A stretch of DNA of 63,536 bases, filler included, from Octopus bimaculoides (lineage: Eukaryota): assembly GCF_001194135.2 (NCBI RefSeq). It is 4 parts of 4 records of this genome, joined end to end, with 100 filler letters (N's around TTAATTAATTAA, not from the genome) between each part and the next. Parts side by side here need not be neighbours in the genome. Positions count along the whole stretch, not along the records: positions 1 to 30,380 come from NC_069007.1; 3 more parts are not named here. One strand, given 5' to 3'. Every line of letters begins with the position of its first letter. Within the stretch, counting starts at the first letter, position 1. Below are positions 3,312 through 6,185 of the stretch, one piece after another. The position numbers were made by a program, and so were the translations under genes. Below the pieces are notes generated by a model. It was not told the DNA's origin, did not search any database, and saw nothing but the letters and a program-made list of their open reading frames with translations.

Positions 3312-6185
3312 CTGTCTTAGTTTCGAACGGTACAGACCTACCAAATAACCCCATTCCCAAAACTAACAAGACAAAAGAACAAGTCGTGGATGTCACCAAC
3401 ACTACCCAGTCCACCTCGGGTACAATAATCAAGGTAAGACGAATATTCACTAAAATCCATTTGTTTTTTTTTTCTGTTGTATTTTTATGGATGAATGAGA
3501 AAGAAGGAACAGTACTCATAAACCACCCAGTCCTTCCACGGCTGGTCGGTCTCATTCTTATTATTGACGTTTAGTTGGCTCATTTATAGCTGCAAAACAA
3601 ACGTGGACAAAGAGAGAATTCTAAAGAGGCGGGGTTAACATTGGGAGTGGGGAAGGATTGGGCATAGTGGATAGCGCAGGAAAAGTTAGGTTTAGATATA
3701 GAATGTATAACGAGGAGAGCAGAAATGGGGTGTCAAGTTTGCTTTTCAGGGGTTGGTATCCAAATAGTTACTTCCGAGAACATGGTGTTGTAGTAGCGGT
3801 AGTTGAGGCAACAGGAGGAGACAGTAGATTCATGGGACAAAGTTTGGACTCCTTTTCTAAATGCATTTGTCGAATGAAATCAAGGACACCGTATATATTA
3901 TACCATTTTTGTTCTTGCCAGGTCAGTGTCCAGTGTGGTGTGGTCGTTGTGCTTGGTGCCTATAACAACAGTCAGCCTAGTCTAGCCAGCTACCACTACA
4001 TTGCCAGTGCAACTGACATGAAGCCGGGTAAATTATACCTGGTTAAACAAGCATCCCCCTCTACGTTCTTCCTGACGATAATTTCCAAGAAACGATTTGA
4101 TCTCCAGACCTCCGCTTGTAACAATCCTTGTTATAACGTCAGTCTCAACGCAACAGGTGAGTATACGGAATTCCATTTTTTTCATTATCAAAAATTATCC
4201 TGTATTCTTTATACATCCTAACCAAGTAAGGAGGAAGGTTTTGGTAGAATCGATGGATAAAAGAGTAAATATCATTAACTTTTTATTAATGGTAATTTAC
4301 AATTGTAGGCGGGTCCCAGAGAAAAGGGGAGATAATTTGAGGACATTAATAATTCCGTAAAATTAAATTACATCCATCGGTTCTACCGAAATCATTCTCC
4401 TTACTTTGTTAGGATATATAAAGAATACAGAGTAATATTATCAGGTAGGAGAGACAACTACAAGCATGTTCTATAATTTACTGGATTTCGTCAGCGAATT
4501 ATTGTCAAATTCAAACTTGTTTTGATCATCCCACGATGTAGCAGAAAAAATTACAGTATTCTTACCAACAATAATTTGCATAATTTAAAAATAAATAAGG
4601 TGATCTAAAGGAAATATCTCAACCTGACCAATAACATGAATTTGGATAACTTATTTAATGGATGCTGTATTGAGTCACTTATGCTCAAAAATTGAAATTG
4701 TCCTCTTAGTTGAAGAAAGAAAAATATTGTGCTCGCTGTATTTGTTAGTGACTGTTAAAGAAAAGATATGAATATTTAAACCTAGCAGAATTCTTTACTC
4801 GTTCCAACACACACACACACACACAATATATAAAAACGTAATTATACTGTCATGTGCTCCTGTTCTAACATATATCATTTTCTCAAACAGATCCCTCTAT
4901 AAAAGTGACCTGCCGTCAAAATAACAAAGAAATACTATGTAGCACCGAGGATCTCAAAAACGTACTCGACAAAAGTAAGTCCATGCAACCTGTTAATTTC
5001 CGAATTTCGCTTTTTTAATATTTTTTCCACTTGGGTTTGTTTTCTTGCTACACACAATCTTCAGTTTCCCACTTTAAACCCACTACGCGGTTCTAGTGTG
5101 GAAACATTCAGCCGCTGTCTCCAGTCTGATAAATAACTTGATGTCTCCATACACCGATTCCTGTTGTCTCTTCCATTGTGCAGTTCCAGTGTTTGTGAGA
5201 TGGTACAGAACATAGAAGTGGGTCTTTAGTGGAGACCCACCCACCCACCACCAGGGACCGATTGGGATACGGTCTTGTGCTTTTACTTGTGGAATCCCAC
5301 CCCGACATACACACAAGGATCCAGGTCTAGGAAGTTAATAAGCTTCAAGTAGTCCGTAGAAGGTATAAAAAGCAACTTTNNNNNNNNNNNNNNNNNNNNN
5401 NNNNNNNNNNNNNNNNNNNNNNNNNNNNNNNNNNNNNNNNNNNNNNNNNNNNNNNNNNNNNNNNNNNNNNNNNNNNNNNNNNNNNNNNNNNNNNNNNNNN
5501 NNNNNNNNNNNNNNNNNNNNNNNNNNNNNNNNNNNNNNNNNNNNNNNNNNNNNNNNNNNNNNNNNNNNNNNNNNNNNNNNNNNNNNNNNNNNNNNNNNNN
5601 NNNNNNNNNNNNNNNNNNNNNNNNNNNNNNNNNNCTACTATTAAACACTTTCGTTCTTTTCTTTCAGATATAAAATATCCGTGCACGAAGGAAAATCGCC
5701 AAAAGGGGCTATATATTTTCCCCTATCCTAATCAACCTGAAAAGTACCTTCAATGTGACTCAGCAGGGAAGCTGACCATCGTCTTGTGTCCTAAAAATCA
5801 AAGCTTTGATGCAACCTCGAAGACATGTAAACTCAGTCCGGTGACTCTGCCCCTACCAGGCATCGCTTTGAGGAAAAATCCTTGCATCATATTCTATCCG
5901 ATATACTATCGACCTCATCCAGAGGATCTTTCGAAATTCATACAATGTAGAAGGGGTAAGAGTCTTGAGGTAACTTGTCCAGCAACACTATACTGGCATC
6001 CAGGAATTTGGGGATGCGTCTTTAATCCATTCAGTAACGTGTGTGGTGCTAACACTAAAGGCATGCTTCAACCGCATCCATTCAGTAATTCCTATTTTAT
6101 AGCGTGTGGCAAATGCAAAGATTATCAAATAAGGAAATGCAAAACTAACAAAAACTGGAATTCAACCTTGAGCGATTGTGTTTAA
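3312..6185 (+). CDS. Multi-exon, probably secreted chitin-binding protein: Thr/Asn-rich N-glycosylated segment, unassigned Cys-containing domain, three CBM14-like domains; first exon not identified
   Basis: Exons 3312-3433 (phase 1>0), 3922-4156 (0>1), 4891-4974 (1>1) and 5668-6185 (1>stop) all have AG/GT boundaries (donors gtaaga, gtgagt, gtaagt) and join into one open frame. AATAAA at 6245-6250. Confidence 0.75.
4201..4429. mobile_element. MITE with about 57-bp inverted arms
   Basis: tgtattctttatacatcctaaccaagtaaggagg...cgatgga (4201-4257) is the near reverse complement of 4373-4429. Confidence 0.75.

What the first reader, a model, noticed from the sequence alone, without database searches (positions are those of the whole stretch)
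3312..6185. Hidden four-exon chitin-binding protein with an unassigned N-terminal domain
The ORF track shows only unrelated-looking pieces, but exons 3312-3433, 3922-4156, 4891-4974 and 5668-6185 splice in phase into one frame of about 318 aa (seen in sequence). The N-terminal half has a Thr/Asn-rich stalk, many N-glycosylation sequons (NGT, NKT, NTT, NNS, NVS, NAT) and a segment of about 105 aa with five Cys (VSVQCGVVVVLGAY...ACNNPC...VTC...ILC) that I cannot assign to a family. Three CBM14-like modules follow. CBM14 proteins are established structural components of chitinous matrices. I infer a lineage-specific matrix protein for beak, radula, sucker cuticle or gut lining, with a possibly undescribed domain.
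Basis: partly seen in the sequence, partly recalled or inferred. Interest (0 to 1): 0.72.

Follow-up and report, generated by a model that had tools for sequence, protein, structure and literature searches.

The report
Truncated octopus VWA–chitin-binding matrix gene
The four exons are real and splice in frame, but they are the back half of an already annotated Octopus bimaculoides gene from a mollusc-wide family of secreted chitin-binding matrix proteins; the 'unassigned' part is a conserved beta-sandwich module of that family with no Pfam family or solved relative.

Summary
The sequence-level observation holds. Exons 3312-3433, 3922-4156, 4891-4974 and 5668-6185 have AG/GT borders and splice into one 318-codon frame ending in TAA. 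That frame carries 8 N-glycosylation sequons, 5 Cys in the first half and CBM14 modules in the last exon.

It is not hidden: RefSeq already has it as LOC106870155 ('uncharacterized', O. bimaculoides).

It is not lineage-specific, and the odd segment is not N-terminal. Full-length relatives occur in cephalopods, gastropods and bivalves. Their layout is signal peptide, ~150-aa helical domain, VWA, this ~125-aa four-Cys beta-sandwich, then 3-4 CBM14. This is the 'CBP' family recently found in apple-snail egg capsules and judged distinct from Pif.

In this assembly the 5' exons are absent. Upstream lie gaps, repeats and an orphan inverted copy of the last exon.

The N gap sits inside intron 3. Both of its flanks match the same intron of a gap-free O. 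vulgaris paralog, so the exon 3-4 join is plausible, though exon 4 has a different divergence history.

The beta-sandwich has no Pfam or PDB match, so it is a genuinely undescribed domain.

Overall: an ordinary member of a known family, with an incomplete gene model and a modestly interesting unnamed domain.

The parts
3312..3433 (+). Exon 'a'. It encodes the VWA-to-beta-sandwich linker and the first predicted strands (VLVSNGTDLPNNPIPKTNKTKEQVVDVTNTTQSTSGTIIK). It begins with 2 nt of a split codon.
   Evidence: The AG|CT acceptor and AAG|gtaaga donor are seen. The exon is orthologous to O. vulgaris L002 ~22777-22901 with the same borders. It matches P0003 residues 360-402, which follow the VWA domain.
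3922..4156 (+). Exon 'b'. It encodes the core of the conserved beta-sandwich module, including C45, C106 and the private C110.
   Evidence: Splice sites are. It aligns without gaps to L002 23750-23984. HMMER finds this segment in 13 mollusc proteins. AF2 predicts strands here with pLDDT 86-92.
4891..4974 (+). Exon 'c'. It encodes the C-terminal hairpin with the conserved C126 and C135, plus a short helix.
   Evidence: Splice sites are. It aligns to L002 24733-24816. The homologous exon is spliced directly to the CBM14 exon in O. vulgaris P0002.
5380..5634 (.). Assembly gap (255 N) inside intron 3.
   Evidence: Gap coordinates are. The left flank 5101-5303 matches intron 3 of the gap-free paralog L004 in the same order and orientation, and the right flank 5641-5667 matches the 3' end of that intron. 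O. vulgaris paralogs carry an (AT)n microsatellite ~40 nt upstream of this acceptor, a likely cause of the break.
5668..6185 (+). Last exon. It encodes three CBM14 (peritrophin-A-like) modules with 4, 4 and 5 Cys, and ends with the TAA stop at 6183-6185.
   Evidence: Pfam CBM_14 hits are. It is 58-60% identical to the last exons of O. vulgaris paralogs. The acceptor is tttcag|AT.
6245..6250 (+). AATAAA, a candidate polyadenylation signal about 60 nt after the stop codon.
   Evidence: Read directly from the sequence. It was not tested.
3248..3311 (+). The 5' extension used by the RefSeq model (MYINQVIIYNFFPIIDVVSFVA). It reads through the conserved acceptor and is probably intron, not coding.
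   Evidence: P0001 begins at the ATG at 3248. The homologous O. vulgaris stretch (L002 22714-22776) is intron upstream of the same acceptor.
1305..1816 (-). Intact paralogous copy of the CBM14x3 last exon in inverted orientation. It sits on a 1.85-kb contig piece flanked by gaps.
   Evidence: tblastn gives 58% identity to P0001 and 63% to P0002. The frame is open, with an acceptor and a stop. Gaps lie at 1855-1954 and immediately before window position 1.

Best explanation
Window 3312-6185 (+) is the 3' part of an Octopus bimaculoides gene (RefSeq LOC106870155). The gene belongs to the mollusc-wide family of secreted 'vWA + chitin-binding' proteins. These are the CBPs of the Pomacea egg-capsule study, and that study judged them distinct from Pif/BMSP.

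Full-length members read: signal peptide, ~150-aa all-helical N-domain, VWA domain, ~125-aa beta-sandwich held by four conserved cysteines, then 3-4 CBM14 modules. The window holds only the beta-sandwich (three exons) and the CBM14x3 exon.

The exons for the signal peptide, N-domain and VWA are not in the assembly where synteny predicts them. The likely reason is that the region is broken by gaps and repeats. Less likely, this copy is truncated.

Inferred mechanism:
- The protein is secreted into a chitin-containing extracellular matrix.
- The CBM14 modules bind chitin fibrils.
- The VWA domain makes protein-protein contacts, so the molecule cross-links chitin to other matrix proteins.
- The N-glycosylated beta-sandwich acts as a rigid spacer or as an additional ligand-binding (possibly glycan-binding) module.

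The gene sits in a tandem, fast-evolving octopus cluster with gene birth, decay and exon exchange.

Shown here: the exon structure, the homology, the family architecture, and the lack of any assigned family for the middle module. Inferred: secretion of this copy, chitin binding, the cross-linking role, and any role of the beta-sandwich.
For: Exon structure and annotation:
- The exons splice in frame.
- The product is 100% identical to NCBI LOC106870155.

Orthology with O. vulgaris:
- Window 3249-5006 is collinear with the gap-free O. vulgaris locus L002 22714-24848 at 86-88% nt identity, introns included.
- In L002 these exons are preceded by exons for a signal peptide plus N-domain (10001-10237, 14961-15248) and for VWA (20318-20896).
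- The VWA exon ends ...AAA G|gt, which is the phase that the window's first exon needs.

Family range and architecture:
- HMMER of the 147-aa segment against 1.84 billion representatives gives 13 hits, all molluscan (Octopus spp., Acanthosepion, Haliotis). The segment always lies after a VWA domain.
- A search with the Haliotis member finds ~700-750-aa proteins covering 96-99% of its length in many gastropods and bivalves.
- The full-length alignment shows the shared architecture. The module alignment shows four conserved Cys.
- The Pomacea capsule protein XP_025102037.1 in the supplement of PMC13394694 has the same N-terminus as family member P0039. That paper describes the family, its spread across mollusc classes and its low identity to Pif97.

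Domains:
- CBM_14 reaches Pfam's gathering score.
- AF2 models the module as a beta-sandwich of ten strands with pLDDT 77.8 and pTM 0.68.

Gap:
- Both gap flanks match one intron of paralog L004.
Against: - No signal peptide, N-domain or VWA exon was found anywhere in the window or in the 6.7 kb upstream, most of which is N. This copy may therefore be a fragment.
- Between the two octopus species, exons a-c are more diverged (81.5% nt) than their introns (86-88%), and dN/dS is about 1.24. That fits relaxed constraint as well as diversifying selection.
- The O. vulgaris ortholog shows decay: it has lost conserved C126, and its last exon carries two frameshifts.
- Exon 4 is much further from every O. 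vulgaris copy (dS 0.48-0.50) than exons a-c are from their ortholog (dS 0.18). The exon 3-4 pairing may reflect gene conversion or a join between paralogs.
- No expression, chitin-binding or secretion data were available for this gene.
Confidence: 0.8

Rival explanations
1. The locus is a decaying gene fragment, a partial duplicate in a birth-and-death cluster. It lost its 5' exons and makes no functional secreted protein. The RefSeq model would then be an ab initio stitch of still-open exons.
For: - The 5' exons are absent.
- dN/dS is ~1.24, and the exons are more diverged than the introns.
- The O. vulgaris ortholog has frameshifts and a lost Cys.
- Another paralog (the P0002 locus) has only a VWA remnant.
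- The RefSeq start codon lies in sequence that is intron in the ortholog.
Against: - All 318 codons are open. All splice sites are intact. All four family-conserved Cys of the module and all the CBM14 Cys are kept.
- The upstream region is full of assembly gaps: 4242 N just before the window, then 100 N and 10 N. Absence of the 5' exons therefore cannot be told from non-assembly.
- Exon 4 against its paralogs gives dN/dS 0.6-0.7, which suggests some constraint.
Confidence: 0.25
2. The four-exon model is a chimera. Exons a-c belong to one paralog and exon 4 to another, brought together by mis-scaffolding across the gap at 5380-5634.
For: - The gap separates them.
- Exon 4 has a very different divergence from O. 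vulgaris (dS ~0.5 against 0.18).
- A second exon-4 copy lies on an orphan contig piece 1.5 kb upstream in the wrong orientation. That shows local scaffold disorder.
- Contig ends around the 10-N gap at 6672-6681 are redundant.
Against: - Both flanks of the gap match the same intron of the gap-free paralog L004, in the right order and orientation.
- Strand, order and splice phase fit the family.
- The break coincides with an (AT)n microsatellite seen at the same spot in O. vulgaris. That gives a mundane cause for the gap.
- Gene conversion between paralogs is evident elsewhere: P0002 against gene B has dS 0.04.
Confidence: 0.15
3. One reading: a complete, cephalopod-specific matrix protein. The novel domain is N-terminal and only a short signal-peptide exon is missing.
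For: - The spliced frame, sequons, Cys and CBM14 modules are as described.
- The hydrophobic RefSeq N-terminus from ATG 3248 could conceivably act as a signal sequence. This was not tested.
Against: - The ortholog and all full-length relatives carry an N-domain and VWA upstream.
- The family spans gastropods and bivalves.
- The conserved acceptor at 3311/3312 is used in O. vulgaris.
Confidence: 0.07
4. It is an octopus Pif/BMSP shell-matrix protein homologue.
For: The VWA + CBM14 combination of the family resembles Pif97 and BMSP.
Against: - There is no laminin-G domain; the protein ends right after the third CBM14.
- Pif/BMSP lack the helical N-domain and the beta-sandwich between VWA and the chitin-binding domains, as described in PMC11291548.
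- None of the 89 homologues carries a Pif or BMSP name.
- The Pomacea study found low identity between CBPs and Pif97.
Confidence: 0.03

Closest known systems
Molluscan CBPs (vWA + 2-4 ChtBD2/CBM14 proteins), identified by proteomics in the Pomacea canaliculata egg capsule (PMC13394694, Mol Biol Evol 2026)
   Same: - Homologous over the beta-sandwich module and the CBM14 modules.
- The O. vulgaris ortholog and Sepia, Haliotis and Pomacea members share the whole architecture.
- Capsule protein XP_025102037.1 has the same N-terminus as family member P0039.
- The paper's tree includes an Octopus sinensis CBP.
   Different: - The window copy lacks the signal peptide, N-domain and VWA exons in this assembly.
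- Octopus copies form a tandem, fast-evolving cluster. Some paralogs replace the CBM14s with a second beta-sandwich and a hydrophobic tail.
- The paper describes only vWA and ChtBD. It does not name the N-domain or the beta-sandwich as domains.
Pif97 / BMSP shell-matrix proteins (Pif/BMSP family, PMC11291548)
   Same: Secreted molluscan proteins that combine VWA with peritrophin-A chitin-binding domains. Both are proposed to link chitin to other matrix components.
   Different: - Pif/BMSP have a laminin-G region and CaCO3-binding parts after the chitin-binding domain.
- They have neither the N-domain nor the beta-sandwich.
- Their sequence identity to CBPs is low.
Peritrophins / cuticular proteins analogous to peritrophins (multi-CBM14 proteins of arthropods)
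   Same: Tandem CBM14 modules that reach the Pfam gathering score. A chitin-matrix role is expected from established knowledge of CBM14.
   Different: - The modules here have 4-5 Cys rather than the canonical 6.
- The protein carries extra non-CBM14 domains.
- No orthology is implied.
Jelly-roll carbohydrate-binding modules (CBM4/6/22) and TNF-like or viral jelly-roll domains
   Same: These are the best Foldseek matches of the AF2 model of the middle module, and they share a beta-sandwich topology.
   Different: The matches are weak (E >= 0.01, TM <= 0.45, identity 6-16%) and there is no sequence signal. This is a resemblance of fold class only.

Membership tests
Molluscan CBP family (vWA + ChtBD2; PMC13394694) | Sequence homology to family members outside the generic VWA and CBM14 domains | tested here: met
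   The 147-aa middle segment alone finds Octopus, Acanthosepion and Haliotis members (E 5e-60 to 4e-5). It aligns with Pomacea, Patella, Littorina, Mytilus and Mercenaria members with conserved Cys.
Molluscan CBP family (vWA + ChtBD2; PMC13394694) | 2-4 C-terminal ChtBD2/CBM14 modules | tested here: met
   There are three modules. Two pass the Pfam gathering score alone, and the third is seen only in the context of the whole protein.
Molluscan CBP family (vWA + ChtBD2; PMC13394694) | One VWA domain N-terminal to the chitin-binding modules | tested here: not met
   No VWA-coding sequence was found in the window or in the readable upstream sequence. The O. vulgaris ortholog has the VWA exon 1.9 kb upstream of the equivalent exon. 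In the window that position is occupied by gaps and an orphan contig, so the absence may be an assembly artefact.
Molluscan CBP family (vWA + ChtBD2; PMC13394694) | Signal peptide / secretion | tested here: inconclusive
   No signal-peptide exon was found. The RefSeq N-terminus comes from read-through of the acceptor. No signal-peptide predictor was available.
Pif/BMSP family (PMC11291548) | Laminin-G domain or CaCO3-binding region after the chitin-binding domain | tested here: not met
   The stop codon follows the third CBM14 directly, and Pfam finds no laminin-G domain.
Pif/BMSP family (PMC11291548) | VWA domain that falls in the Pif/BMSP clade | not tested
   This copy has no VWA, and no phylogeny was run. 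The published comparison reports low identity between CBPs and Pif97.
CBM14 / peritrophin-A (PF01607) | Match to the profile above the gathering score | tested here: met
   The whole protein scores 47.4 bits against a cut-off of 22.1. Single modules score 29.8 and 30.2 bits.
CBM14 / peritrophin-A (PF01607) | Canonical six-cysteine pattern | tested here: not met
   The modules have 4, 4 and 5 Cys. The same reduced pattern is seen in family members of other molluscs.
CBM14 / peritrophin-A (PF01607) | Binding to chitin | not testable with these tools
   This needs a pull-down with recombinant protein.
Any Pfam or PDB family for the middle beta-sandwich | Significant profile, sequence or fold match | tested here: not met
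   - Pfam: no family is shared by more than 1 of 13 members, and the best E-value is 0.02.
- PDB sequence and profile searches: nothing.
- Foldseek against PDB: best E-value 0.01, TM <= 0.45.

The most novel reading that the evidence does not exclude
The ~125-aa four-cysteine beta-sandwich between VWA and CBM14 is a previously undescribed, mollusc-restricted extracellular domain. It may be a new carbohydrate-binding or matrix-binding module. In octopuses it has been duplicated, recombined (tandem copies with a GPI-like tail) and driven by diversifying selection (dN/dS > 1). That would point to a recognition function rather than a purely structural one.
Probability: 0.3. Interest if true: 0.5.

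Novelty: new member of a known kind. Interest (0 to 1): 0.3.

Why it matters
For annotation, LOC106870155 should be treated as a 5'-incomplete member of the molluscan vWA/chitin-binding CBP family. It is not a stand-alone novel protein, and its first 21 residues are doubtful.

For biology, the useful residue is threefold:
- This widespread family carries two conserved modules that no database names: a helical N-domain and a Cys-stabilised beta-sandwich.
- Octopuses have expanded the family into a rapidly changing tandem cluster.
- Defining these domains would improve annotation of hundreds of 'uncharacterized' mollusc proteins. It could also clarify how chitin matrices (egg capsules, gill, gut, shell remnants) are assembled.

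Tried and rejected
1. Inversion by recombination between the two inverted CBM14 exons. I first read the match of window 6405-7281 to the minus strand of L002 (33598-33057) as evidence for an inversion or misorientation. I dropped this when the same flank matched the 3' flank of P0002 in gene orientation (L004 27516-27926). The exon-4-plus-flank unit is simply shared by paralogs.

2. Profile search of the 5.8-billion-protein collection with the module alignment A2. It returned only one protein and was uninformative because of the word index. The exhaustive HMMER search and the search with Haliotis P0014 did the work.

3. Assigning the module to a known fold family. Foldseek gave only weak jelly-roll matches: Pgp3, CBM4/6/22, viral capsids and the Kex2 P-domain. 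A faint Pfam Ig_TMEM132_4th hit (E 0.02) is seen in only 1 of 13 members.

4. Assigning the family's N-domain. There is no Pfam hit and no PDB profile hit. Foldseek gave only weak lytic-transglycosylase MltE matches (TM 0.42-0.45, E ~1).

5. Literature on this gene or on octopus VWA/chitin-binding proteins in suckers. Nothing was found.

6. Upstream exons. tblastn with full-length O. vulgaris proteins found none in the window or in L001.
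Full report
**What is in the sequence**

The window is Octopus bimaculoides chromosome CM046627.1 (assembly GCA_001194135.2) near 17.68 Mb. The four stated exons have canonical borders: tttgtag|CT...AAG|gtaaga, ttgccag|GT...CAG|gtgagt, caaacag|AT...AAA|gtaagt and tttcag|AT...TAA. Joined, they give one open frame of 318 codons and a stop. Exon 1 starts with two bases of a split codon. 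The 1/2 junction is phase 0, and the 2/3 and 3/4 junctions are phase 1. Pfam finds CBM_14 at 47.4 bits with three stretches. Taken alone, modules 1 and 2 pass the gathering score and module 3 does not.

**The gap**

The 255-N gap (5380-5634) lies entirely within intron 3, so its unknown length cannot affect the frame. The real question is whether the two sides belong together.

- The left flank (5101-5303) matches intron 3 of the gap-free O. vulgaris paralog locus L004 (23762-23809 and 24783-24934), between its exon-3-like exon (23132-23215) and its CBM14 exon (~25727).
- The right flank (5641-5667) matches the last bases of the same intron.
- Both matches are in the same order and orientation.
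- O. vulgaris paralogs carry an (AT)n microsatellite about 40 nt upstream of this acceptor.
- In O. bimaculoides, both copies of this exon have a gap 33-38 nt upstream of the acceptor. The break is most simply a short-read failure at a microsatellite.
- The family's exon-3-to-CBM14 junction is the same in O. vulgaris P0002, so no missing exon is required.

Continuity is thus plausible but not proven.

**It is not hidden**

The spliced product is 100% identical to NCBI 'uncharacterized protein LOC106870155', 340 aa. That model uses the same four exons but extends exon 1 upstream to an ATG at 3248. It reads through the acceptor at 3311/3312. The homologous stretch in O. vulgaris is intron in front of the same acceptor, so those 21 residues are doubtful.

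**It is not N-terminal, and the model is 5'-incomplete**

Window 3249-5006 is collinear with O. vulgaris locus L002 22714-24848 at 86-88% nucleotide identity, introns included. This is the ortholog.

In O. vulgaris the three equivalent exons are preceded by:
- two exons for a signal peptide and a ~150-aa domain (10001-10237, 14961-15248);
- one VWA exon (20318-20896; Pfam VWA E = 4e-39).

The VWA exon ends ...AAA G|gt, which is exactly the phase that exon 1 of the window requires.

None of these upstream exons is found in the window or in the 6.7 kb before it. That stretch is mostly N: 4242 N end just before window position 1. Further in lie a 100-N gap, a 10-N gap and SINE-like repeats.

An intact, inverted paralogous copy of the CBM14x3 exon sits at 1305-1816 on a 1.85-kb piece bounded by gaps. 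That position makes no sense for a gene on either strand. The local scaffold is therefore unreliable. The lack of 5' exons may be an assembly loss or a real truncation.

**The family**

An exhaustive HMMER search with the 147-aa segment against 1.84 billion representatives gave only 13 hits. All are molluscan: Octopus bimaculoides, O. vulgaris and O. sinensis paralogs, Acanthosepion pharaonis, transcript assemblies and Haliotis asinina. In complete members the order is signal peptide, N-domain, VWA, this module, then 3-4 CBM14.

Searching with the Haliotis protein found 89 proteins. These include ~700-750-aa proteins covering 96-99% of the query in Haliotis, Gigantopelta, Littorina, Batillaria, Pomacea, Babylonia, Patella, Aplysia, Pecten, Argopecten, Mercenaria and Mytilus, plus an annelid relative that lacks the module. 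Almost all are named 'uncharacterized'.

One of them, Pomacea P0039, has the same N-terminus as XP_025102037.1. That is an egg-capsule matrix protein listed in the supplement of PMC13394694. The paper names these proteins CBPs (one vWA plus 1-3 ChtBD). It finds them in every mollusc class examined except Aplacophora, including a cephalopod. It reports low identity to Pif97 and shows very different tissue expression in different species: digestive gland, gill, kidney, gonad and mantle. Pif/BMSP proteins as reviewed in PMC11291548 are VWA, chitin-binding domain, then laminin-G, which this protein is not.

**The unassigned module**

A 13-member alignment across cephalopods, gastropods and bivalves shows four conserved cysteines (C45, C106, C126, C135 in the window protein), a conserved Pro and hydrophobic strand patterns. 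C110 is private to this copy.

- No Pfam family is shared by more than one member.
- There is no PDB hit by sequence or profile.
- AlphaFold2 with a 9-sequence alignment gives an all-beta sandwich of ten strands plus a C-terminal helix (pLDDT 77.8, pTM 0.68). The N/T-rich 'stalk' contributes the first strands.
- Foldseek against PDB finds nothing below E = 0.01. The best matches are generic jelly rolls: the Pgp3 C-domain, CBM4/6/22, viral capsids and the Kex2 P-domain, all with TM <= 0.45.

It is a conserved but unnamed module of a known family, not a lineage-specific novelty.

**Evolutionary state of this copy**

Between the two octopuses, exons a-c are 81.5% identical in nucleotides and 65% in amino acids, with dS 0.18, dN 0.22 and dN/dS about 1.24. 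The exons are more diverged than their introns.

The O. vulgaris ortholog has lost C126, and its last exon carries two frameshifts. Part of this signal is therefore decay on the O. vulgaris side.

The window copy keeps every splice site, an open frame and all conserved cysteines.

Its exon 4 is far from all O. vulgaris copies (dS 0.48-0.50; 68% nt to the positional counterpart). The orphan inverted copy is at orthologous distance from an O. vulgaris copy (dS 0.21). Two O. vulgaris copies are nearly identical (dS 0.04). Exchange among paralogs (gene conversion) or a join between paralogs is needed to explain exon 4.

Other paralogs show further remodelling. The P0002 locus keeps only a VWA remnant. 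P0015, P0004 and P0012 carry two tandem modules followed by a hydrophobic tail and no CBM14.

**Mechanism**

The following rests on established knowledge of CBM14 and VWA domains and on the interpretation in PMC13394694. The protein is expected to be secreted and to bind chitin fibrils through its CBM14 modules. It would tie them to other matrix proteins through VWA. The glycosylated beta-sandwich would serve as a spacer or as an extra binding surface. All of this is inference for the octopus gene. No expression or binding data exist for it.

**Verdict**

This is a correct sequence reading of an already annotated, 5'-incomplete member of a known mollusc family. The domain is genuinely undescribed but is neither N-terminal nor lineage-specific. 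Interest is modest.

Noticed in passing
window 1305-1816 (-): An intact paralogous CBM14x3 last exon with acceptor, open frame and stop, in inverted orientation. It sits on a 1.85-kb piece bounded by gaps, 1.5 kb upstream of the gene. It is closer to O. vulgaris copies (dS 0.21) than the gene's own exon 4 is. It is probably misplaced in the scaffold.
   Followed up: partly
L002 10001-15248 (O. vulgaris); not present in the window: The family's ~150-aa N-domain has no Pfam or PDB sequence match. AF2 models it confidently as all-helical (pLDDT 89). It carries a motif RRLAYVES-DG...GGIWQ(V/I)D that recalls lysozyme or lytic-transglycosylase motifs. Foldseek gives only weak MltE hits (TM 0.42-0.45). 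Octopus paralogs have AQ in place of the ES.
   Followed up: partly
L003 (O. bimaculoides 17.72 Mb); proteins P0015, P0004, P0012: Some octopus paralogs carry two tandem copies of the beta-sandwich module followed by a hydrophobic, GPI-signal-like C-terminus, and have no CBM14 modules.
   Followed up: no
window 3312-4974 against L002 22777-24816: The coding exons are more diverged between the two octopus species (81.5% nt, dN/dS ~1.24) than the surrounding introns (86-88%).
   Followed up: partly
L002 27589-28088 and 24733-24816: The O. vulgaris ortholog's CBM14 exon has two frameshifts, and its module has lost a conserved cysteine (VKYAQ in place of VTCRQ). The annotated O. vulgaris protein instead ends by reading into the intron.
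   Followed up: yes
window 6405-6669 and 6683-6940, either side of the 10-N gap at 6672-6681: Both sides of the 10-N gap match the same O. vulgaris stretch (L002 ~33598-33400). The contig ends are redundant, which indicates an unmerged overlap or haplotype.
   Followed up: partly
window 2332-2494 and 3113-3276; 2946-3091; 7556-7912: SINE-like interspersed repeats with many copies in the O. vulgaris loci. One ends just before exon 1, and a 94.5%-identical copy lies 780 bp upstream. Homology to the O. vulgaris intron stops at 3249.
   Followed up: partly
window ~10145 to at least 16185 (-): A dynamitin (PF04912) gene is annotated on the minus strand downstream of the finding. More family members lie beyond it at 17.72 Mb.
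   Followed up: no
window 3090-3140: A short tandem duplication of a ~22-nt unit (cttcactacgaactatcacgaa) lies inside the repeat upstream of exon 1.
   Followed up: no
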